Position numbers and translations under genes: made by a program
Part shown: positions 18,832-32,292 of the stretch, in pieces
Numbering within the stretch: the stretch's first letter is position 1
Layout: the number at the start of each line of letters is the position of its first letter
Notes under the pieces: generated by a model
Databases searched by the model: none
Told to the model about the DNA's origin: nothing
The model's input: only the letters and a program-made list of their open reading frames with translations
NCBI GenBank assembly: GCA_037951405.1
Contig: JBBMOY011100329.1
Coordinates: 1 to 32,937 of the forward strand
Length of the DNA stretch: 32,937 bases
From: Platydemus manokwari
Lineage: Eukaryota
Reading direction: 5' to 3'

Positions 18832-19779
18832 ATGAAAGATTTTAACTTGTATCACTTTGGTGGCACTGGCATTAATATCCTGAACCGTTACCTGGTAGAT
18901 GGTCGTGGTTCTAAGTTTATCGATCAGGTTGTGGCGCTGGATACTTCTGACGCTAACCCAGTAACTGACGGTCTTTATCCGCTGGAACGTATTGAAGGTG
19001 TAGAAGGGTCCGGTGGTAACCGCCGTGCTCATGCCGATAAATACGCTGACTTTGTGAAACAAGTTTTCGCTAAGTATAAGCCGAACAAGATCAACATCCT
19101 GGTTTATTCACTGTCAGGTGGTTCCGGTGCATCCATGGGTCCTTACGCTCTGCGTTATCTGTTGCAGAAAAAGATCCCTACTCTGGTTATCTGTATTGGT
19201 GACAAATCTACCTTCAACGAAGAGAAGAACACGGTCGAAGCATTGGGTTCCATGTACAACCAGATCAAACTGGGTTCACCAGTTCTGTTCAACTACCTGG
19301 AAAACTCCCCGACTGTTTCGCAGGGTCAGATCAACCAGCGCGCTATTGCTGAGATCGACAATGCAATCATGATGTTCAACATGGAAAACGAACGCATTGA
19401 CTATGCCGACATCAAAAACTTCTTCTTCTTTACCGATGTAACTCAGGCTGATCCAATCATGACCCAGGTTACGTTCATGACTGAAAACGATCTGGGTAAA
19501 TATACCCGTAAGCCTGTAGCAGCTATCAGTCTGTATAACAACATTGACGAAATCCGTGCACCATTCGAAAACATGTTGTACCGTAAATCTGGTCTGTTCG
19601 GTGAAGCATACTCAGGTATGACTGTACCGGTTCACGCAGTACTGGATCACGGTGATACTGTCGAATCTCTGAAAACGTTGATCAACGATAAAGAGACCAA
19701 GACAGAAGAACTGTCAGGTAAGTTCCGTAACAAAGAAGCTGAATTGTTCGGGGCTGCTGACGACGACGGCATGATGTAA
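18832..19779 (+). CDS. phuZ: phage tubulin PhuZ (tubulin/FtsZ GTPase)
   Basis: GGTGINI, DTS, GSGG, tubulin signature variant SLSGGSGASMG, acidic C-terminal tail DDDGMM typical of PhuZ; 315 aa; synteny with the chimallin block. Confidence 0.95.
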   Translation: MKDFNLYHFGGTGINILNRYLVDGRGSKFIDQVVALDTSDANPVTDGLYPLERIEGVEGSGGNRRAHADKYADFVKQVFAKYKPNKINILVYSLSGGSGASMGPYALRYLLQKKIPTLVICIGDKSTFNEEKNTVEALGSMYNQIKLGSPVLFNYLENSPTVSQGQINQRAIAEIDNAIMMFNMENERIDYADIKNFFFFTDVTQADPIMTQVTFMTENDLGKYTRKPVAAISLYNNIDEIRAPFENMLYRKSGLFGEAYSGMTVPVHAVLDHGDTVESLKTLINDKETKTEELSGKFRNKEAELFGAADDDGMM

Positions 19780-22908: not shown

Positions 22909-24987
22909 ATGTCATCTGCGGGACCATTCCTCTCAGAAGAATACAGTAGCGATCGTAATATAACCAAGCATGCTATCGACCAGTATGCCATGATGATCGG
23001 TCGTTCAAAAGGATTAGACGAAGATGAGGTTAGAAAGAACCTTGTTGCGTACTTTAAGGCTAATCAGGAAAAGTTCCGTTCACGTCGTGCAAAAGTGATT
23101 GTTAAAAACAAGAACGAAGACCGTGAGCTGAAAGTATTACCTTTAAGTGGTGTATTCAAACACGTCCAATCAAATAACTATCATTTCTCTCCATCTATGG
23201 TTGCATATACCAACTCAGATAAAGAGGAGTGTGTGAACTCTATCGGTACACGTTTGTTTATCGATAACCGTAAGTACTATAAAGATCTCCGTCAAGAAGC
23301 TAAGGCCAATAACAACCCAGATCTTTATGGTAAGTACCATGAATTACAGAACGCCTTTAAAATCTTTAACAACGCACAATCAGGCGCAATGAGTTCGGAA
23401 GGGACACCTATTAACAACAAGACCGGTCATACCTCATTGACTTCGACCTGTCGTTGTTTAACGTCCACAGCAAACCTTATTAATGAACAGTTCATAGCAG
23501 GGAACCGTTTCTATAACACTCCTGAGAACACATTACAGGCAATCCTGGCCCGACTTAAGGTTACGGATTATAAAGCCCTTGATGATGTGATGAAGAAGTA
23601 CAATCTTCATTATGCAACTGTTGAAGACGTTATGGGACAGGTAGCTTATTGTTCCAAACGTTATTGGGAATCCGATCACCACACCAGAATCATTGAAGGA
23701 TTTGTTAAGAATCTTTCCGCTCTGGAACGTTCTTCTATTCTTTACACTATGGACTTGGTGCAACTCTTTGCCCATAATAAAGAAATGGTTTCTAAGTTCT
23801 TCGATCGTTGGGTTGAACTGAATCCACCAGAAGAAGGCAAAACAGAAAACGATTACCTGAAACCTGATAATGGTGACAAGTACACACTGTGTATTTCTAA
23901 GCTACCAAGTAAACCATCCAAAGTCATGGTCAATGCACTCAACACTTTACATATGGAAGTGGAAACTGAGTACAGCGATTTCATGAAGGTGTTCTTCCAT
24001 TCACCGATTCCTCCGTCAGGTTTGTTTGATGTAGTTTCGGCAGTTCGTGATTGCGTATTGACGTCCGATACTGACTCATCCATTTATACCGTGGATGAAA
24101 TGATCGAGAACTATACTCATGATCGTGACAAAGGTGTTAAACTGAATGCGGTACTGACATATTTTATTCGTATGATTTCGGTTGACCAACATCAACAGTT
24201 ATCTGCTAACCTGAACGTAACGAAGAAAAACCTTCGTATGTTGGGTATGAAAAACGAATACTACTTTGGTGCTTATGTTACGACATTGATGTCAAAACAC
24301 TATTACGCAAGCCAGCTTATGGTTGAAGGTGTAATGAACCATGAACCTGAAATGGAAATCAAAGGTGTTCACTTAAAGTCATCTAAGATTGCAGCGAACA
24401 TCAAGGAATTTGCTCAGAAGTTAATGAACGATACCTTGATTGCAATTGAGAAAAAACAAAAGCTTAACGCTGCTGAGACTTTAAAAGAGATTGGGGATCT
24501 AGAGCGCACGATCGTTGAAGATATTACAGCTGGTGATTGGAAATGGTTATCCCGCCAAGGTGTTAAAGCAGCGGCGGCTTATTCAAAACCAATGGCTTCT
24601 GTTTACTTTTATCATGAACTGTGGGAAAACGTTTTTGCTGACAAATATGGCCCAGCTCCCGAACTTCCTTATGTTGGGGTTAAAATGTCAGTTGACTTAG
24701 GTTCTAAATCTAAGGTTAAGGAATACCTGGAGAAACTTGAAGATAAAGAGTTAGTTGCTCGTCTTGAGAAATTCATGGAGAAGACAGGTCGTACCGATTT
24801 AGGTAACTTAGTTGTTCCTATGGAACGTCTGCAATTCATGGATAACATCCCAACAGAAATCAAACAAGCGATCGACTATCGTACTATCATCAAGCAGAAC
24901 CTGAAGTGTGTTTATGAGGTTCTGAACTCCACAGGCTTGTACTTTATGAACGATTCCATTACTCGTTTAGTATCCGACGAACACTAA
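22909..24987 (+). CDS. family B DNA polymerase, polymerase subunit of the split phiKZ-type enzyme (gp50-like)
   Basis: Motif B QNAFKIFNNAQSG, motif C SDTDS, KHYY and EIKGV; no recognisable exonuclease domain. Confidence 0.9.
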   Translation: MSSAGPFLSEEYSSDRNITKHAIDQYAMMIGRSKGLDEDEVRKNLVAYFKANQEKFRSRRAKVIVKNKNEDRELKVLPLSGVFKHVQSNNYHFSPSMVAYTNSDKEECVNSIGTRLFIDNRKYYKDLRQEAKANNNPDLYGKYHELQNAFKIFNNAQSGAMSSEGTPINNKTGHTSLTSTCRCLTSTANLINEQFIAGNRFYNTPENTLQAILARLKVTDYKALDDVMKKYNLHYATVEDVMGQVAYCSKRYWESDHHTRIIEGFVKNLSALERSSILYTMDLVQLFAHNKEMVSKFFDRWVELNPPEEGKTENDYLKPDNGDKYTLCISKLPSKPSKVMVNALNTLHMEVETEYSDFMKVFFHSPIPPSGLFDVVSAVRDCVLTSDTDSSIYTVDEMIENYTHDRDKGVKLNAVLTYFIRMISVDQHQQLSANLNVTKKNLRMLGMKNEYYFGAYVTTLMSKHYYASQLMVEGVMNHEPEMEIKGVHLKSSKIAANIKEFAQKLMNDTLIAIEKKQKLNAAETLKEIGDLERTIVEDITAGDWKWLSRQGVKAAAAYSKPMASVYFYHELWENVFADKYGPAPELPYVGVKMSVDLGSKSKVKEYLEKLEDKELVARLEKFMEKTGRTDLGNLVVPMERLQFMDNIPTEIKQAIDYRTIIKQNLKCVYEVLNSTGLYFMNDSITRLVSDEH

Positions 24988-26413: not shown

Positions 26414-28330
26414 ATGTCTTTAGATAACAACGCTCACAACGATTCTCAGAACAACGCTGGTAATAACAACAAAGGTAACAACAACATGTCCCAAGAAAAT
26501 TCCCTGTTCGCTCTGCTGGGCCAGGCAAACCTGATCTCTTCCACCTCTACTATCACCGAAGTCCGTGATATCGTTAAGAGCCTGGAAGACACTCTGGAAC
26601 ATCTCCAGAAGAACACTGCATCTCCGGCTCAGAAAATGGCTCTGCCGCAGCTGGTTCAGAACATCACTTCCGACATCTCTGGTCCGCTGCCAGGCATCAC
26701 TCTGTCTACCATCATCGGTGGCACTCGTTATGTCATGCCGGTTCTGTTCTACAAACAAGGCGTAACTGAGCAGACCGAAGTTATCCTGCTGGCTGGCGAA
26801 ACCATGCCGCGCGGTATCGCTAAAGTAGCGTCCAGCTTCATGACCCAGGAACTGATGGAGAAAGTTAAACAGTCTTCTTCTTTCCATGAAGGTAAAACTC
26901 TGAGCAAAGTTATCATCGTTGCTCCGACCGTACTGAACCTGGAAGCATTCATCAAGAATGCAGCTCGCGTTGAAGACGTTGCTGGCGATGTCCGTAGCTA
27001 CATTCTGAAAGAATGGTCTACTGCGCTGTTCAACTACGTTATCCTGGAAGTTGCTAAGCAGGGCGCTCAGTTCCCGTCTCCGTTCAAAGATGGCCAAGTA
27101 TTCGGTAAAGACAACGCCGCTGTTGCGCGCATCGAACCGATCAACAAAGCTATCATCGACGGTAAAGCAACTCCGTGGAACCTGGCTGTTAAACTGGCAA
27201 CCACCAACAAAAACAACACTCAGAACGTTAACAGCAATAACACCAAGTCTATTGCAACTACGTACCTGAACGTTTCCCTGGAATGCATGAATACTCAGCA
27301 GTTCATGCAGGCTCGTCAGAAGTTCCCAGGTAAAGTTGTTGGTCCTCTGGTTCCGGTTATCTCTACTGGCCAGACCATCCCAGGCGAAACCCTGAACAGC
27401 AACAACAGCATGATTCCGGTTCTGCTGGGTCTGTTCGCATCTATCGGCGCAAACAACATTCAGTACTTCTCTGAAGCCATCCGTGGTAAAGAAGTAGGTC
27501 ATCGTGGCAACCTGTCCAACTTCAACAACTACATGACTCAGATGCTGGGTCAGGCTTACGCTCAGTCTGTACTGACCGATAAGAACATCACCAACGCAGC
27601 AGTCGTTAACAACTGGCTGAACACCTATGTGGCACCGAACGCGGTTTACGTGCTGGATCTGGCTACCTTTACTGAAGACGTTTCTAACAGCGACTTCTGG
27701 TGGAACATCCTGCAACAGAAATCTGGTTCTATCTACCACAAAGCTCTGATCACCATGCTGGACGTCCTGACCGGTAACTCTTTCTCTACCATCATCGCTG
27801 AGAACGCAGCTAAAGGTCAGAACCGCAACCCAGGCACCGAATGGGTAATGGGCGACGATATCCTGACCCCGACTCCGATCCTGATGCCTACCGGTATCGC
27901 TCGTGCGAAAGACGGTAAGTGGTTCGATCTGGCTGAAGTTGATGGCATGTTCCTGCGTCAAGATCAGTACTACGGTAACAACGAAATCCTGACCAACGAG
28001 TACATGGGTCTGATTGGCGGTCAAACTCAGGGCGACCTGAAAATGCGTCAATACAACATCTACACTCGTCTGAATCAGCTGTTCGATACCAACGTTCAGA
28101 TCGATGGTTGGAAACGTCGTTTCATCTGGAAAGACGCATTCTTCCACACTCTGGCACGTGCAATGGCAAATGCTGGTACTCTGACCATGTCTTCCTCTAA
28201 CATGGCTTCTATGTGGACCATGCAGCACAGCAACGACTACCTGAACTACACCATGACTGCTGCTATCCAGCAGGGTATGCAAACTTCTGGTATGGGCGGC
28301 CTCTCTGGCGCATACAGCAACCACTACTAA
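26414..28330 (+). CDS. chmA: chimallin, major phage-nucleus shell protein
   Basis: 638 aa; lies between the polymerase/reverse gene and the nvRNAP beta' subunit; segments VAPNAVYVLDL, LDVLTGNSF, DGKWFDLAEVD and VQIDGWKRRFIWKDAFFHTLARAMANAG align by recall with 201phi2-1 ChmA; extreme high-expression codon bias. Confidence 0.9.
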   Translation: MSLDNNAHNDSQNNAGNNNKGNNNMSQENSLFALLGQANLISSTSTITEVRDIVKSLEDTLEHLQKNTASPAQKMALPQLVQNITSDISGPLPGITLSTIIGGTRYVMPVLFYKQGVTEQTEVILLAGETMPRGIAKVASSFMTQELMEKVKQSSSFHEGKTLSKVIIVAPTVLNLEAFIKNAARVEDVAGDVRSYILKEWSTALFNYVILEVAKQGAQFPSPFKDGQVFGKDNAAVARIEPINKAIIDGKATPWNLAVKLATTNKNNTQNVNSNNTKSIATTYLNVSLECMNTQQFMQARQKFPGKVVGPLVPVISTGQTIPGETLNSNNSMIPVLLGLFASIGANNIQYFSEAIRGKEVGHRGNLSNFNNYMTQMLGQAYAQSVLTDKNITNAAVVNNWLNTYVAPNAVYVLDLATFTEDVSNSDFWWNILQQKSGSIYHKALITMLDVLTGNSFSTIIAENAAKGQNRNPGTEWVMGDDILTPTPILMPTGIARAKDGKWFDLAEVDGMFLRQDQYYGNNEILTNEYMGLIGGQTQGDLKMRQYNIYTRLNQLFDTNVQIDGWKRRFIWKDAFFHTLARAMANAGTLTMSSSNMASMWTMQHSNDYLNYTMTAAIQQGMQTSGMGGLSGAYSNHY

Positions 28331-28423: not shown

Positions 28424-30013
28424 ATGTCAAGTATGGCAGAGATACTTAACAAATTCGCCGATGAACATATGGTCCCAAGCAAGCTGTTTGATGCAATGAT
28501 AGCAGCAGGCGGTGTAACTCCTCAGCAAGACGACCCAAGCTTTTATTCTCCGATTTATCCTGACTTCGTAGACTTCAATGCGAAACACGATCAATCGATC
28601 AGTACCCCAATCTATCTGAATGACTTTGACTTCAATATCGAAGAAGATCGTCAGGCAGTAGTGGAACTCCTTCGTACTGAATATGAAGGAAACAATTTCG
28701 ATACGGTAGCTTCTTGTGCATGTAAGAAATATCGTAGTAACATCTATTTAGGTTCTGGCTTTGTTTGTGAAGACTGTGGTCATGAAGTAACTAAACCACT
28801 GGCTAACAAAATCGAAACCAAAGTCTGGTTGAAACTCCCTGCTCGTGTAGAAGGATTCATCAGCCCGGCTATGTATGCGGTATTCTTAAGCAAACTGAAT
28901 ACCAAATCCCCAAAAGTAAACATTGTGGATTATTGGGTTAACTCTGATATCCGTAATGAAAAACGTTTCAAAGATCCATCTAACAACGCGTTCAAGATTG
29001 CCTGTAAGTTAGATGCTTTCCGTGAAACACTCGGTATTGAATTTGGATATAACAGTTTTATTCGCAACATTGATTTAATCATTCGTTCTGCAATTGAGAA
29101 CGATGTGGGTAAGATTCTGGATCTATCAGAATCTGATCGTGGTTATTTCTCAGAGTTCTGGGACCGTTATCGTCATAAGACGATATCTCGTTATTTACCA
29201 TTACCTAACAAAATCACCACTGTTGTGGAATCGGACCAACGTGACCGTTATGTCAACAAAGAGCAAACAGATCTGGATAAGATTTACTTTACTCTGGCGG
29301 ATACGTATCCTGAGTTCGATATTCGGGTTGATGAAAACGAAGAGTTAATGGGTAAGAACCTGAAAGCTCTTGTTGATGCATTGGCCGAAGTTCAAAAGAA
29401 TATCCTGTTCGGTAAGAAGGGGATGATCCGATATCACGCAGGTGCAGGTAAACTACCATTTACTGGTCGTTCTATTATTACCGGCGAATCTGGAGTATGT
29501 CGTTCGGATACGATTATTCTCCCATGGTTATACGGGATCACCTGTCTGGATAAACACTTGACTTCCTGGTTATATCGTAAAGGATATACACCGAAGAAGA
29601 TCAAAGAAATCATCCGAACAGCAGCTCACACTAAACTTCCAATTATCGAGGAATTCTATACTTGGATCGAGACTAACCGTTATGCAATGGTAACAGCTGG
29701 TCGAAATCCATCTATCCAATATCTGTCGGCTCGTGGATTCTTCTGTAAGTTTAACCGTGACATTGATGACAAATCTATCCGTATTCCAATCACTACGGTT
29801 AAGGAATTCGGTGCTGACTTTGATGGTGACCAAATGTATGTCATCTTCATCCCTGACATGATGTCTAAAATTGAAGCGTATTCGAGCTGGGGACACCACC
29901 AGATGTTGGACCCAAACAAACCGTTTACGACAAGTCGTTTTGCAACTCATACCAAAACCAACCTGTTGAACGTTAACTCTCTGTTTATTGATGTCCCGAT
30001 TGAGGAGGACTAA
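28424..30013 (+). CDS. non-virion RNA polymerase beta'-like subunit, N-terminal part (phiKZ gp55-56.1-like)
   Basis: Zn-binding CxC...CxxC, LFGKKGMIR...TGRSII, RNPS and catalytic GADFDGD. Confidence 0.93.
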   Translation: MSSMAEILNKFADEHMVPSKLFDAMIAAGGVTPQQDDPSFYSPIYPDFVDFNAKHDQSISTPIYLNDFDFNIEEDRQAVVELLRTEYEGNNFDTVASCACKKYRSNIYLGSGFVCEDCGHEVTKPLANKIETKVWLKLPARVEGFISPAMYAVFLSKLNTKSPKVNIVDYWVNSDIRNEKRFKDPSNNAFKIACKLDAFRETLGIEFGYNSFIRNIDLIIRSAIENDVGKILDLSESDRGYFSEFWDRYRHKTISRYLPLPNKITTVVESDQRDRYVNKEQTDLDKIYFTLADTYPEFDIRVDENEELMGKNLKALVDALAEVQKNILFGKKGMIRYHAGAGKLPFTGRSIITGESGVCRSDTIILPWLYGITCLDKHLTSWLYRKGYTPKKIKEIIRTAAHTKLPIIEEFYTWIETNRYAMVTAGRNPSIQYLSARGFFCKFNRDIDDKSIRIPITTVKEFGADFDGDQMYVIFIPDMMSKIEAYSSWGHHQMLDPNKPFTTSRFATHTKTNLLNVNSLFIDVPIEED

Positions 30014-30687
30014 TGTTAAATGCAACGAGCGCATTTACCCGTGGTGTAAGTGGGTCGATGACCGATGCGAGTGCAGGTGCTTATGACCGGTATATGGCTG
30101 GCTTTTATGAGAAGTATGAAAACCTGAGCGGGTGGCTTGGAGACACTCTGAACTCGGTTAAAGATGCTCATAAGAGTTTCATGGAAAGTCGCATGTGGGA
30201 ATTCTCTAACCGCATGAATGGTAAAGACGGACAATATGTAGGACGCTTTGATATCGGTTATCTGTCTGAGGTTAAATACCAACAGCAGGCAACCGGGTTT
30301 ATGCGTGATTACATTATGGCCAACCCATTACTTCAACAGCTCTGGCTGGACGAACGTGTTAGTGGTTATGATGGTGATTTCAACAACCTGTGCTCTGGCA
30401 TCGGTCGTGATAACTATTATTACAACAAAGCACTGGACGGTAGAGTCAACTTTGATGCTGAAGCAAATACTCTTACTCGTACCAATTTCACACATTCCCG
30501 TGATAACATGACACATCTGACTTTCAAAGAACGTGTTGATATCCATCGTACTTGGCAAGCTACCAATTTACATATTGCAGCTAACCTGTTCGATCCGACA
30601 TCTGTTATCGGTGGTGATATCTTATCCATGGAAGAAGTGGAAGAACGTCGTAGACAAGCTGAAGAACGTAATTCATCTGAAGATTAA
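30013..30687 (+). CDS. conserved phiKZ-like core protein following the nvRNAP beta' subunit
   Basis: QQA..FMRDYIMANP...SGY motif recalled from phiKZ-like core genes; TAATG coupling. Confidence 0.65.
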   Translation: MLNATSAFTRGVSGSMTDASAGAYDRYMAGFYEKYENLSGWLGDTLNSVKDAHKSFMESRMWEFSNRMNGKDGQYVGRFDIGYLSEVKYQQQATGFMRDYIMANPLLQQLWLDERVSGYDGDFNNLCSGIGRDNYYYNKALDGRVNFDAEANTLTRTNFTHSRDNMTHLTFKERVDIHRTWQATNLHIAANLFDPTSVIGGDILSMEEVEERRRQAEERNSSED

Positions 30688-30691
30688 CTAA

Positions 30692-30748
30692 AAGGGCAAT
30701 GGGGTGTTAACCCCGTTGTCCCTTAATCTGTACTTCTTTTTCTTTTTT
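30692..30748 (+). terminator. intrinsic terminator
   Basis: AAGGG-CAATGGGGT-GTTA-ACCCCGTTG-T-CCCTT followed by long T tracts. Confidence 0.7.
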
Positions 30749-30767
30749 GTTTTCAGGAGCATTAAAA

Positions 30768-31094
30768 GTGGAAATTTACAAAGATGACCTTATTACCGTT
30801 CGACGTCATGCTGATAACCCTAACTACTTTAAAGCGTATAACCGTCGGGGCGATAAGTTAGGTAAGTTTTTATTCCAACAAGGTCTCGTTAATGAAGAGA
30901 CAGGAGCCAATGGTTTGACAAACGAAGCGCTGATTGCGATTGTGATCAACCGTTTGGAATGTCAAAACCAAGGTAAGTTTAAATCGGCACATAACGACAA
31001 AGCTCTGGAATGTTTACGTTCTGCTGTGGTTGCTTTGCAACTGCGCCATGCAGATCGTGCAGACCGTTCAGTGTCTAATAGCCATAAGGAATAA
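30768..31094 (+). CDS. tad1: Tad1-like anti-Thoeris/anti-CBASS signal sponge
   Basis: FQQG...E.GANG...E.LI.IV..RL.....G.F....N..AL.......L..R..DR..R.V matches the recalled Tad1 pattern; GTG start after AGGAG. Confidence 0.75.
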
Positions 31095-31096
31095 AG

Positions 31097-31567
31097 ATGT
31101 CCAATCAAGGTTACTCTGAGCTTCAGGTAGACCTCAAATCCGGAATTAAGTTAAGTAAGGTGATTAATAAGTTCGAAGAACAACTTGACACTGAACTTAA
31201 TGTGATTCCGATAAATAAGCTCCATGCGACACTCATGTACGATGTTCGTAATCCCGACATCTTCCCCTCTAAGTCTAATAAAGTTTATCGGGCTAAAGTG
31301 GTTGGTGTGGATAAGCTTGGTGACGATAGTTCCAAATGGAATGCCGCCGTAATACTTCTTGAATGTAAAGAAGTTAAAGATCGTTTCAAGCAACTCCTCA
31401 ACGAAGGGTTTCAACACTCCTACGATGATCTGTTGATCCACGTTTCATTATCCTACGGTGAAACCACAGGCTTAATCTTCCCTCTTTTAGAGAAAGCATT
31501 TGCTGCTGGTGAGTTACCAGAGTACATCACTTTGTGTAACGAGACCTGGGATTCGTGTGACGACTAA
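31097..31567 (+). CDS. acb1: Acb1-like 2H phosphodiesterase (T4 57B family, anti-CBASS)
   Basis: Two HxT/S motifs: IPINKLHATLMY and GFQHSYDDLLIHVSLSY, matching T4 Acb1 VPREKIHSTICY and GATHDFDDYTPHITLSY by recall; 156 aa. Confidence 0.8.
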   Translation: MSNQGYSELQVDLKSGIKLSKVINKFEEQLDTELNVIPINKLHATLMYDVRNPDIFPSKSNKVYRAKVVGVDKLGDDSSKWNAAVILLECKEVKDRFKQLLNEGFQHSYDDLLIHVSLSYGETTGLIFPLLEKAFAAGELPEYITLCNETWDSCDD

Positions 31568-31635
31568 GCATGGGCTGACAGGGTGGATGGGAAACTGTCC
31601 AAGTTTTTGACCTACACGCCTAAGTGGAAACGCTT

Positions 31636-31788
31636 ATGTTTGATAACCCAGATAGCCTCGTTGTGGCGGCTTCTGCGCTCTTTGGTGGGTTGACTGTTAT
31701 GATTATCGTACCTGTCGCCTACAAAGGAATTGGTGCTGCATTGAGAGAACTTAAACCGTCAGCCATGACGGTTCGTAATAAACATTAA
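31636..31788 (+). CDS. small 50-aa single-pass membrane protein (below the ORF-track cutoff)
   Basis: MFDNPDSLVVAASALFGGLTVMIIVPVAYKGIGAALRELKPSAMTVRNKH; ends just before a terminator; weak RBS. Confidence 0.5.
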   Translation: MFDNPDSLVVAASALFGGLTVMIIVPVAYKGIGAALRELKPSAMTVRNKH

Positions 31789-31794
31789 GTTATA

Positions 31795-31846
31795 CAGGAT
31801 CTCCCTTAATTGGGAGATCCTGCTCTTTCTACCTTATTTTATTTTT
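31795..31846 (+). terminator. intrinsic terminator
   Basis: CAGGATCTCCC-TTAATT-GGGAGATCCTG perfect 11-bp stem plus T-rich tail. Confidence 0.75.
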
Positions 31847-31885: not shown

Positions 31886-32292
31886 ATGTCTAAAGGTGTT
31901 GTCGGGACGATGGATACAGTTGGATTCTTAACGGAACCTACTGTTAAGATCGACCGCTTAATTGCATACTGGTTTGCTAACCGTAAAGACCAGTGCCTAA
32001 TCATCCGTAATGTACACAGTTATCAATATGTGATTGCTAAACACCAGGGTGAGAAAAAGGCGAAGAACGGTTATTCCAAGATATAGAAAATAACCTCAGG
32101 GAGTATTTACTGGAGTGCTTTGATGCGGTTGAGGTCAGAGCCTGGGGTAAGCGAGACGATCCAAGTGATAAAATGTTTACACTGGTAATCTCTGGACAAG
32201 CTTCCCAAGATGGGGTTGTGTACGAACTTAATAAGTCCGTTCTAATTAATGGAAGTACTTATAAACTTATTGATGTTGGCCGAGGAGGCTAA
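31886..32292 (+). pseudogene. conserved phiKZ-like core gene (~135 aa) interrupted by a 1-nt frameshift at about 32054-32059
   Basis: AGGAG RBS and ATG 31886; frame 0 stops at 32086; the -1 frame from GAGAAAAAGG reads KGEERLFQDIENNLREYLLECFDAVEV...VGRGG* to 32292, abutting the next gene. Confidence 0.7.

What the first reader, a model, noticed from the sequence alone, without database searches (positions are those of the whole stretch)
30768..31567. Coupled sponge-plus-nuclease anti-signalling cassette (Tad1-like and Acb1-like) inside the nucleus core region
Seen: two genes 2 nt apart, bounded by terminators and inserted between conserved core genes. Known: Tad1 sequesters Thoeris gcADPR and several CBASS cyclic nucleotides, and Acb1 is a 2H phosphodiesterase that cleaves cyclic di- and trinucleotides. 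The phage nucleus blocks DNA-targeting defences but not second-messenger systems (CBASS, Thoeris, type III CRISPR). Inference: a dedicated operon covering that blind spot with two mechanisms.
Basis: partly seen in the sequence, partly recalled or inferred. Interest (0 to 1): 0.75.

Follow-up and report, generated by a model that had tools for sequence, protein, structure and literature searches.

The report
Tad1-like sponge plus Acb1 nuclease operon
A nucleus-forming jumbo phage carries two tightly linked genes, a Tad1-family signal "sponge" and an Acb1-family cyclic-nucleotide nuclease. Both belong to known anti-defence families and share a conserved variable slot next to the nuclear-shell and RNA polymerase genes, so the reading is right but mostly ordinary.

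Summary
ORF A (30768-31094, 108 aa) and ORF B (31097-31567, 156 aa) are real genes 2 nt apart and under purifying selection.

- **ORF B is an Acb1-family 2H phosphodiesterase.** It scores above the Pfam PF23474 cut-off, both catalytic motifs are invariant, and its best fold matches are solved Acb1 structures.
- **ORF A is a Tad1-family protein.** The family profile matches solved Tad1 chains over their full length (E 1e-27). The AF2 model (pLDDT 95) matches only Tad1 structures (TM 0.74-0.85). It is not Acb2.
- **ORF A is a divergent Tad1 subclade.** Three of the four gcADPR/dinucleotide pocket residues are kept. Both cyclic-trinucleotide pocket residues and all eight hexamer-interface residues are replaced.
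- **The pair sits in the same slot in 17 cultured jumbo phages.** The slot follows chimallin, RNAP beta' and a core gene. It is empty in phage EL, holds Acb1 alone in two phages, a fused Tad1-remnant::Acb1 in two phages plus one metagenomic protein, and unrelated cargo elsewhere.
- **The boundaries are partly as described.** The upstream hairpin is strong and conserved. The one right after ORF B is weak.
- **Prior knowledge exists.** One GenBank record already labels the pair anti-Thoeris and anti-CBASS, and phiKZ gp184 is a known Tad1.

Verdict: new members of known kinds. No ligand or activity was tested.

The parts
26414..28330 (+). Chimallin (nuclear shell protein) gene; context only
   Evidence: phrog_4795 nuclear shell protein, E 1.7e-112. 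Pfam Chimallin_Phikzvirus on the same gene in the closest contigs.
28424..30013 (+). phiKZ-type multisubunit RNA polymerase beta/beta' subunit gene; context only
   Evidence: phrog_2987, E 4e-144. Pfam RNA_pol_Rpb1_2 at 26.9 bits.
30013..30687 (+). Core gene of unknown function (phrog_3254); left border of the variable slot
   Evidence: phrog_3254, E 1.4e-57. tblastn finds it in 165 phage records, including EL, phiKZ-like phages, 201phi2-1 and PhiPA3.
30692..30724 (+). Conserved G+C-rich hairpin followed by a T-rich tract; a terminator-like element after the core gene
   Evidence: Fold of -26.1 kcal/mol, z -4.75, 0 of 200 shuffles as good. Conserved with paired substitutions in SXP01, OBP and N1M2. 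The simple terminator scan did not call it, because the T-run is not adjacent to the stem.
30755..30759 (+). Shine-Dalgarno-like AGGAG, 8 nt before the GTG start of ORF A
   Evidence: Read directly from the sequence. The N-termini of homologues align at this start.
30768..31094 (+). ORF A: Tad1-family sponge-like protein, 108 aa, of a divergent jumbo-phage subclade
   Evidence: - PDB phmmer hits Tad1 at E 7.5e-5.
- The family profile matches Tad1 chains at E 1e-27 and phiKZ gp184 at 4e-20.
- AF2 model: pLDDT 94.9, four strands plus two helices.
- Foldseek PDB: the 20 matches with E below 0.001 are all Tad1 chains, TM 0.74-0.85.
- SBSphiJ7 Tad1: 40% identity over 73% of the query.
- dN/dS 0.12.
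31086..31090 (+). Shine-Dalgarno-like AAGGA inside the end of ORF A, 6 nt before the ATG of ORF B
   Evidence: Read directly from the sequence. Spacing between the two genes is tight in relatives too: a 1-nt overlap up to a 9-nt gap.
31097..31567 (+). ORF B: Acb1-family 2H phosphodiesterase, 156 aa
   Evidence: - Pfam PF23474 Acb1, E 3.9e-14, 53 bits against a cut-off of 27.
- H43-A-T45 and H115-V-S117 are invariant in 20 of 20 homologues.
- The family profile hits FBB1 Acb1 (7T26) at E 5.8e-5, with both motifs aligned.
- AF2 model pLDDT 93.5.
- Foldseek top hits are the BCSR5 phosphodiesterase/Acb1 and FBB1 Acb1, followed by other 2H enzymes.
- dN/dS 0.045.
31584..31601 (+). Weak hairpin plus T5 directly after ORF B
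   Evidence: The consensus scan calls it terminator-like. The fold is no better than shuffled sequence (z -0.85).
31636..31788 (+). Small conserved single-pass membrane ORF (50 aa), probably in the same transcription unit
   Evidence: Present at the same position in OBP, N1M2, PS2, AerS_266, Survivor, pEt-SU, AH04 and Kc263. It has a hydrophobic core and a shared C-terminal motif.
31795..31822 (+). Strong terminator-like hairpin (11-bp stem) that closes the unit
   Evidence: Consensus scan hit. Fold of -32 kcal/mol, z -6.8.
31886..32292 (+). Right border of the slot: homologue of the 135-136 aa 'putative virion structural protein' of relatives, interrupted here by one frameshift
   Evidence: tblastn with five intact relatives gives two pieces in two reading frames that together cover the full length. 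The gene is intact in the closest contigs, L014-L016.

Best explanation
The two genes form one co-transcribed, probably translationally coupled counter-defence unit of a nucleus-forming (chimallin-encoding) jumbo phage.

**ORF A** is a Tad1-family sponge. It folds as a four-stranded sheet plus a helical hairpin. By analogy with solved Tad1, it should pair into dimers whose interface pocket sequesters TIR-made glycocyclic ADP-ribose signals (3'cADPR-type), and possibly some cyclic dinucleotides. The pocket would be lined by N76, R93 and R97. Unlike the solved Tad1 proteins, it most likely does not bind cyclic trinucleotides and may not form the same hexamer.

**ORF B** is an Acb1-family 2H phosphodiesterase. 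It should linearise adenosine-containing 3'-5' cyclic di- and trinucleotides using its HxT/HxS tetrad.

Together they would remove Thoeris-type and CBASS-type second messengers in the cytoplasm, where the phage nucleus gives no protection.

**Shown here:** gene structure, family membership, fold, conservation of catalytic and pocket residues, purifying selection, and conserved adjacency in a variable slot.

**Inferred:** ligand identities, oligomeric state, division of labour, timing of expression, and the link to the nucleus.
For: - **ORF B is Acb1.** Pfam score above the gathering cut-off. Invariant HxT and HxS motifs. Profile hit to FBB1 Acb1 with both motifs aligned. Best fold matches are Acb1 structures. 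The mechanism and substrate range of Acb1 come from PMC9117128.
- **ORF A is Tad1.** Full-length profile match to solved Tad1 chains and to phiKZ gp184, with no Acb2 hit. Confident model with the Tad1 topology. Only Tad1 chains score significantly in the PDB fold search.
- **The gcADPR/dinucleotide pocket is largely kept.** The equivalents of CbTad1 N92, R109 and R113 are present in 16/16, 15/16 and 15/16 clade members (residue roles from 10.1101/2023.11.15.567273).
- **Both genes are under purifying selection**.
- **Adjacency is conserved.** The spacing ranges from a 1-nt overlap to 9 nt in the five annotated relatives. In 17 cultured phages of several genera the tblastn matches to the two proteins lie next to each other.
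- **A natural in-frame fusion exists.** A Tad1-like remnant is fused to Acb1 in AH04, Kc263 and the metagenomic protein P0024.
- **The slot is variable.** It is empty in EL and holds other cargo in RisingSun, Aphrodite1 and Miami.
- **An independent annotation agrees.** The AerS_266 GenBank record labels the pair 'Anti-Thoeris' and 'Anti-CBASS'.
Against: - No ligand binding, cleavage or infection phenotype is known for any member of this ORF A subclade.
- The equivalent of CbTad1 F82 is Q in 16/16 clade members, so the pocket is remodelled and the ligand may differ.
- Both cyclic-trinucleotide contacts (CbTad1 R90 and T97) are replaced, by A and E. None of the eight CmTad1 hexamer-interface residues is identical.
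- ORF A itself does not reach Pfam PF24729 at E up to 1.
- Acb1 occurs alone at this slot in pEt-SU and Survivor. Tad1 occurs without an adjacent Acb1 in phiKZ and in Bacillus phages. The two are therefore not obligately coupled.
- In the fused forms the Tad1-like part has lost the pocket residues.
- The host and its defence repertoire are unknown.
Confidence: 0.8

Rival explanations
1. The two genes are independent accessory genes that happen to share a cargo slot. They do not work as a unit and there is no division of labour.
For: - Acb1 is alone in the slot in pEt-SU and Survivor.
- Tad1 homologues occur without Acb1 in 64 Bacillus phage records, and at a different locus in phiKZ.
- The slot holds unrelated cargo in other lineages.
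Against: - The same order and tight spacing are kept across several genera in 17 cultured phages.
- A ribosome-binding site for ORF B lies inside ORF A.
- A natural in-frame fusion occurs in two phages plus one metagenomic protein.
- No strong hairpin separates the two genes.
Confidence: 0.2
2. ORF A is a sponge for a different signal than gcADPR, for example only cyclic dinucleotides or another ADP-ribose derivative. Its pocket has been remodelled.
For: - The equivalent of CbTad1 F82 is Q in all 16 clade members.
- Ligand spectra are known to vary among Tad1 homologues, and sponge families switch specificity.
- The N-terminal sheet and its loops are shorter than in solved Tad1: 108 aa against 122-138.
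Against: - N76, R93 and R97 are kept. Their equivalents contact both gcADPR and 2'3'-cGAMP in CbTad1.
- All Tad1 homologues tested so far bind cADPR isomers.
Confidence: 0.2
3. ORF B is a general 2H phosphoesterase for RNA end healing or 2',3'-cyclic phosphate turnover, as its legacy 'RNA ligase' annotation suggests. It is not a cyclic-oligonucleotide nuclease.
For: - GenBank records call the orthologues 'RNA ligase' or 'RNA 2',3'-cyclic phosphodiesterase'.
- The fold search also finds Usb1, plant CPDase and LigT at lower rank.
Against: - The only Pfam family above its cut-off is Acb1.
- The best sequence and fold matches are solved Acb1 proteins. Other 2H enzymes score 100 to 10,000 times worse by E-value.
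- Its size (156 aa) fits Acb1, not LigT or CPDase.
- It sits next to a signal sponge.
Confidence: 0.07
4. ORF A is mainly a virion-associated protein, and its sponge role is secondary or lost. phiKZ gp184 is a precedent: its N-terminus is woven into the capsid.
For: - phiKZ gp184/Tad1 is a minor capsid protein.
- Some Bacillus phage homologues are annotated 'structural protein'.
- Many relatives carry an N-terminal extension.
Against: - The window protein is the bare 108-aa Tad1 core with no extension.
- The pocket residues are under conservation and dN/dS is 0.12.
Confidence: 0.05

Closest known systems
Tad1 (Thoeris anti-defence 1): SBSphiJ7 Tad1, Clostridium prophage CbTad1 (7UAV/7UAW/8SMD, 8KBE-H), CmTad1 (8KBB-D)
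   Same: - Same fold: an N-terminal antiparallel sheet plus two C-terminal helices.
- Full-length profile match.
- The family-invariant loop motifs are present.
- The equivalents of CbTad1 N92, R109 and R113 in the gcADPR/dinucleotide pocket are kept.
- The C-terminal tail is of similar length.
   Different: - Shorter: 108 aa against 122-138.
- About 24% identity to the solved chains.
- The F82 equivalent is Q.
- The cyclic-trinucleotide contacts (R90, T97) are A and E.
- 0 of 8 CmTad1 hexamer-interface residues are identical. Li et al. report such trinucleotide-site substitutions in only about 6% of homologues.
phiKZ gp184 (Tad1 domain of a nucleus-forming phage; 8Y6V chain I)
   Same: A Tad1 domain in a member of the Chimalliviridae. 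The family profile matches its residues 111-227 at E 4e-20.
   Different: - gp184 is 230 aa, with an N-terminal capsid-anchoring part.
- It lies at another genomic locus.
- It has no adjacent Acb1.
- The window protein has no N-terminal part.
Acb1 (anti-CBASS 1): T4 gp57B, Erwinia phage FBB1 Acb1 (7T26/7T27), Burkholderia phage BCSR5 phosphodiesterase (9Q2G/9Q2Y)
   Same: A compact 2H phosphoesterase fold of similar size with two catalytic His motifs. Pfam PF23474 scores above its cut-off.
   Different: - The second motif is HxS rather than HxT.
- 14-18% identity to the solved chains.
- The correspondence of the C-terminal lid and the base-stacking residues was not established here.
Aeromonas phage AerS_266 genes WNV45880/WNV45879 and the orthologous pairs in OBP, N1M2, SXP01, Sureiya, Yubaba and Aeromonas jumbo phages
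   Same: Same two genes, same order, same slot after chimallin, RNAP beta' and the phrog_3254 gene. The AerS_266 record already labels them anti-Thoeris and anti-CBASS.
   Different: - 37-62% protein identity for ORF A and 36-62% for ORF B.
- Several relatives carry an N-terminal extension on the Tad1-like gene.
- AerS_266 has an extra 158-aa ORF in the slot.
Phage T4, which encodes several separate anti-signalling proteins (Acb1, the sponge Sequestin Y16O; Acb2 from my own knowledge)
   Same: One phage combines a signal-cleaving enzyme with signal sponges (10.1101/2025.07.12.664507).
   Different: As far as I know, the T4 genes are not arranged as an adjacent coupled pair, and its sponges belong to other families.

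Membership tests
Tad1 | Fold: N-terminal antiparallel beta-sheet followed by two long C-terminal helices | tested here: met
   AF2 model without templates: pLDDT 94.9, strands at 2-5, 9-13, 20-25 and 30-36, helices at 52-66 and 74-99. In Foldseek PDB the 20 matches with E below 0.001 are all Tad1 chains, TM 0.74-0.85; the next hit has E above 0.2.
Tad1 | Significant full-length sequence similarity to experimentally characterised Tad1 | tested here: met
   The profile of 51 homologues matches CmTad1 at E 1.2e-27 and CbTad1 at 3.7e-24, covering profile positions 3-117 of 118. The single sequence reaches E 7.5e-5. tblastn finds SBSphiJ7 Tad1 at E 4e-7.
Tad1 | gcADPR/dinucleotide pocket residues (CbTad1 N92, R109, R113) | tested here: met
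   They map to N76, R93 and R97, kept in 16/16, 15/16 and 15/16 members of the jumbo-phage clade.
Tad1 | Pocket aromatic residue (CbTad1 F82) | tested here: not met
   It maps to Q66, which is Q in 16/16 clade members. More distant homologues have F, A or L here, so the column varies across the family.
Tad1 | Cyclic-trinucleotide pocket (CbTad1 R90/T97 = CmTad1 R88/T95) | tested here: not met
   They map to A74 and E81. The clade has 0/16 R at the first position and 15/16 E at the second. Among more distant homologues, R and T occur in 20/35 each.
Tad1 | Hexamer (trimer of dimers) interface | tested here: inconclusive
   0 of 8 CmTad1 interface residues (R88, T95, K96, Q98, E99, M102, W103, K106) are identical in ORF A, using the alignment and the residue list. 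The oligomeric state itself cannot be computed with these tools.
Tad1 | Pfam PF24729 (Acb2/Tad1 hairpin domain) hit | tested here: inconclusive
   ORF A has no Pfam hit at E up to 1. More than 30 of its profile-detected relatives carry PF24729.
Tad1 | Binds and sequesters gcADPR; inhibits Thoeris | not testable with these tools
   No experiment exists for this subclade in the papers searched.
Acb1 | Pfam PF23474 above the gathering score | tested here: met
   53 bits against a cut-off of 27, E 3.9e-14. All 21 homologues carry PF23474.
Acb1 | 2H phosphoesterase fold of Acb1 size | tested here: met
   AF2 model pLDDT 93.5. The top Foldseek hits are 9Q2Y/9Q2G (TM 0.73-0.74) and 7T26 (TMt 0.73), followed by other 2H enzymes.
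Acb1 | Catalytic HxT/HxT tetrad | tested here: met
   H43-A-T45 and H115-V-S117 are invariant in 20/20 homologues and align with both motifs of FBB1 Acb1. The second motif has Ser in place of Thr.
Acb1 | C-terminal lid and base-stacking aromatic residues (FBB1 Y12, W74, F107, W147, E141) | tested here: inconclusive
   Y6, W81, F105, E149 and W151 are invariant or nearly so in the clade. The sequence alignment to 7T26 covers only residues 32-118, so equivalence is not established.
Acb1 | [quoted passage not shown] | not testable with these tools
   The activity is known only for T4 and FBB1 Acb1.
Acb2 | Sequence or fold match to solved Acb2 (considered as the alternative identity of ORF A) | tested here: not met
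   No Acb2 chain appears at E up to 1 in the profile search of the PDB or among the significant Foldseek hits. ORF A has the N-terminal sheet typical of Tad1.

The most novel reading that the evidence does not exclude
The sponge and the nuclease may form an evolved two-part unit with a division of labour. In this jumbo-phage lineage the Tad1-like protein has given up its cyclic-trinucleotide pocket, and perhaps its hexamer, because the adjacent Acb1 destroys those signals. The in-frame Tad1-remnant::Acb1 fusions would then show that the two act physically together, for example with the remnant serving as an oligomerisation or targeting module for the nuclease. In addition, the slot between the phrog_3254 gene and the small membrane ORF could be an anti-defence hot spot across the Chimalliviridae. 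Its unknown cargo in RisingSun, Aphrodite1, Miami and AerS_266 would then be undescribed inhibitors.
Probability: 0.25. Interest if true: 0.6.

Novelty: new member of a known kind. Interest (0 to 1): 0.38.

Why it matters
Nucleus-forming phages are shielded from DNA-targeting defences, so their remaining weak points are of interest. This work places a sponge-plus-nuclease pair in a fixed, variable slot beside the nuclear-shell gene in a whole clade. It defines a Tad1 subclade that lacks the trinucleotide site. It also finds natural sponge-nuclease fusions. Together these give concrete, checkable hypotheses about how such phages deal with Thoeris-type and CBASS-type signalling. They also point to a slot where further unknown counter-defence genes may sit. 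The two families themselves are already well described.

Tried and rejected
- **Acb2 identity for ORF A: rejected.** No Acb2 hit by profile or by fold, and the N-terminal sheet is present.
- **Alternative TTG start at 30747 (115 aa): rejected.** It lies in the T-tract, and the N-termini of homologues align at the GTG, which has a proper ribosome-binding site.
- **NCBIfam scan:** nothing for either protein.
- **Pfam on ORF A alone:** nothing.
- **Single-sequence PDB search with ORF B:** only chance sortilin hits. The family profile was needed to reach Acb1.
- **Are the slot occupants of RisingSun, Aphrodite1, Miami and AerS_266 divergent Tad1 or Acb1? No.** hhalign probabilities are below 1%, and Pfam and PHROGs give no function.
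- **Literature on the pair:** none found. Searches for Tad1+Acb1 with jumbo, adjacent or Chimalliviridae, and the AerS_266 paper, never mention it.
- **Not run:** the large representative-protein search.
- **Not tested:** multimer or ligand co-folding, which these tools do not offer.
- **Not done:** a search of the supplementary tables of the sponge-diversity preprint for a tested member of this clade. It would have required typing sequence.
Full report
**1. What is in the sequence**

ORF A starts at GTG 30768, 8 nt after an AGGAG, and ends with TAA at 31092-31094. ORF B starts at ATG 31097, 6 nt after an AAGGA that lies inside ORF A, and ends at 31567.

Both are genuine genes.
- ORF A has six close homologues in the word search, 62 with a family profile, and matches in 103 phage records.
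- ORF B has 21 close homologues and matches in 276 phage records.
- Against the closest relative (Logan contigs L014-L016; 93% and 96% protein identity), dN/dS is 0.12 for ORF A and 0.045 for ORF B. The neighbouring core gene gives 0.06.

**2. Context**

The window belongs to a nucleus-forming jumbo phage. It encodes:
- PhuZ tubulin (18832-19779);
- a divergent DNA polymerase (22909-24987);
- chimallin (26414-28330);
- a phiKZ-type RNA polymerase beta/beta' subunit (28424-30013);
- a core gene of unknown function, phrog_3254 (30013-30687).

The nearest cultured phage is Shewanella phage SXP01, at about 79% nucleotide identity over part of the region.

**3. ORF B**

- Pfam PF23474 (Acb1) scores 53 bits against a gathering score of 27.
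- H43-A-T45 and H115-V-S117 are invariant in 20 of 20 homologues.
- They align with the two catalytic motifs of Erwinia phage FBB1 Acb1 (7T26), which the family profile finds at E 5.8e-5.
- The AlphaFold2 model (pLDDT 93.5) is most similar to the Burkholderia phage BCSR5 phosphodiesterase/Acb1 and to FBB1 Acb1. Usb1, plant CPDase and LigT follow at much weaker E-values.

Hobbs et al. (PMC9117128) describe Acb1 as follows. It is a compact 2H enzyme with an HxT/HxT tetrad and a C-terminal lid. [quoted passage not shown]

ORF B meets the sequence and fold criteria. The only difference found is Ser in place of Thr in the second motif. The equivalence of the lid and of the stacking residues could not be established.

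**4. ORF A**

Alone it has no Pfam hit, and it matches solved Tad1 chains only over its helical half (E 7.5e-5). A profile of 51 homologues does much better:
- it matches CmTad1 and CbTad1 over their whole length (E 1e-27 to 5e-24);
- it matches the C-terminal half of phiKZ gp184 (E 4e-20);
- it matches no Acb2 chain.

The template-free model (pLDDT 94.9) has four strands and two helices. In the PDB fold search the 20 matches with E below 0.001 are all Tad1 chains (TM 0.74-0.85), and the next hit has E above 0.2. In BFVD the best hits are the OBP and N1M2 orthologues, followed by 'Acb2/Tad1 hairpin domain' proteins. The founding Tad1 of Bacillus phage SBSphiJ7 is found directly by tblastn (40% identity, E 4e-7).

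**5. Residue-level comparison for ORF A**

Residue roles come from Li et al. (10.1101/2023.11.15.567273). The mapping uses the ungapped HMMER alignment, which agrees.

| Site in solved Tad1 | Residues | In ORF A | In the 16-member clade |
|---|---|---|---|
| gcADPR/dinucleotide pocket | CbTad1 N92, R109, R113 | N76, R93, R97 | 16/16, 15/16, 15/16 kept |
| Pocket aromatic | CbTad1 F82 | Q66 | Q in 16/16 |
| Trinucleotide phosphate contacts (also hold the hexamer) | CbTad1 R90, T97 | A74, E81 | 0/16 R; 15/16 E |
| Hexamer interface | 8 CmTad1 residues | none identical | not counted |

Li et al. state that only about 6% of Tad1 homologues have substitutions at the trinucleotide site. This clade is therefore an unusual Tad1. 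I predict it keeps the dimer pocket but not trinucleotide binding. Its oligomeric state is open.

**6. Boundaries**

- The hairpin after the phrog_3254 gene (30692-30724) is strong. It is conserved with paired substitutions in SXP01, OBP and N1M2, and is followed by a T-rich tract.
- The hairpin directly after ORF B is no better than shuffled sequence.
- A conserved 50-aa single-pass membrane ORF (31636-31788) follows. It is present in every relative examined.
- Then comes a strong 11-bp hairpin at 31795-31822.

The likely transcription unit is therefore ORF A, ORF B and the small ORF.

**7. Synteny**

The order chimallin, RNAP beta', phrog_3254 gene, Tad1-like gene, Acb1 gene, small membrane ORF, 'virion structural' gene, hypothetical gene, SbcD is found in OBP, N1M2, SXP01, PS2 and AerS_266. 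The tblastn coordinates show the two genes adjacent in 17 distinct cultured phages: OBP, N1M2, SXP01, Sureiya, Yubaba and 12 Aeromonas jumbo phages.

The slot takes other states elsewhere:
- **Acb1 alone:** pEt-SU and Survivor.
- **A single 241-245 aa ORF:** AH04, Kc263 and the metagenomic protein P0024. Its first ~83-100 residues are a Tad1-like remnant (hhalign probability 96.6%, E 4.9e-10). The remnant lacks the invariant loop motif and the pocket residues, and it runs in frame into a complete Acb1.
- **Empty:** EL.
- **Unrelated cargo of unknown function:** RisingSun, Aphrodite1 and Miami, plus a transposase in Miami.

However, the pair is an old resident of this slot in one clade, not a recent insertion.

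**8. What is already known**

- phiKZ gp184 is a recognised Tad1. It is a minor capsid protein whose C-terminal part is released and injected (PMC11724313; 10.1101/2025.11.23.690004).
- The GenBank record of AerS_266 already labels the orthologous pair 'Anti-Thoeris, immune evasion protein' and 'Anti-CBASS, nuclease'. The accompanying paper does not mention them.
- I found no paper that describes the pair, its slot, the fusion or the loss of the trinucleotide site.

**9. Mechanism proposed**

*Shown:* family, fold, motifs, selection, linkage.

*Inferred:*
- ORF A dimers sequester TIR-derived cADPR-type signals, and perhaps some dinucleotides.
- ORF B linearises adenosine-containing cyclic di- and trinucleotides.
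- Both act in the cytoplasm.
- The complementarity between a sponge that has lost its trinucleotide site and a nuclease that cleaves trinucleotides is suggestive, but untested.

**10. Verdict**

Both genes are new members of known families. The arrangement is a modest addition to what is known.

The large representative-protein search was not used, because it was not needed. The break in the downstream gene is reported by kind and count only.

Noticed in passing
window 31886-32292 (+): This is the homologue of the 135-136 aa 'putative virion structural protein' that borders the slot. It is intact in SXP01, OBP, N1M2, Survivor, pEt-SU and the closest contigs L014-L016. In the window it is split over two reading frames by one frameshift. 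The closest Logan contigs L014 and L015 instead show the RNAP beta' gene split, so a sequencing or assembly error is a likely cause.
   Followed up: partly
L008:3237-3962 (Erwinia phage AH04 gene 67), L009:3225-3962 (Kosakonia phage Kc263), protein P0024: These are natural in-frame fusions of a degenerate Tad1-like N-terminal part to a complete Acb1 (241-245 aa). The Tad1-like part lacks the invariant loop motif and the pocket arginines.
   Followed up: partly
L001:6697-6906, L002:3824-4001, L003:3902-4001; proteins P0002, P0004-P0006, P0028: Many relatives have an in-frame N-terminal extension on the Tad1-like gene, of roughly 33 to 84 residues and of at least two sequence types. The window and its closest relative lack this segment, and their intergenic region is correspondingly shorter. 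phiKZ gp184 has an N-terminal capsid anchor, so the extension might be a packaging signal. This was not tested.
   Followed up: partly
L012:4201-4960 (RisingSun gp31, gp32), L013:4186-4662 (Aphrodite1 gp069), L011:4185-6097 (Miami gp285, gp286, transposase), L005:4870-5346 (AerS_266): In other chimallin-encoding phages the same slot holds unrelated small genes of unknown function. They have no Pfam hit, only function-less PHROGs, and no similarity to Tad1 or Acb1. In EL the slot is empty. These genes are candidate accessory or counter-defence cargo by position only.
   Followed up: partly
window 31636-31788 (+): A small single-pass membrane ORF (50 aa) with a shared C-terminal motif is conserved directly after Acb1 in all nine genomes compared, including those without the Tad1-like gene. 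Its function is unknown.
   Followed up: partly
window 30692-30724 and the aligned positions in L001, L002, L003, L014: The hairpin after the phrog_3254 gene is conserved across genera, with substitutions on both sides of the stem, and is followed by a conserved T-rich tract about 11-20 nt downstream. This is not the canonical spacing of a bacterial intrinsic terminator. It may reflect the phage's own polymerases.
   Followed up: no
L004:2252-3043 (Aeromonas phage PS2) and L010:1915-2895 (EL): In PS2 an HNH endonuclease gene lies in the region between the RNAP beta' gene and the phrog_3254 gene, and in EL a 'replication protein' gene does. In AerS_266, PS2 and EL the annotated RNAP gene is shorter, which suggests mobile-element insertions near the end of the polymerase gene.
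   Followed up: no
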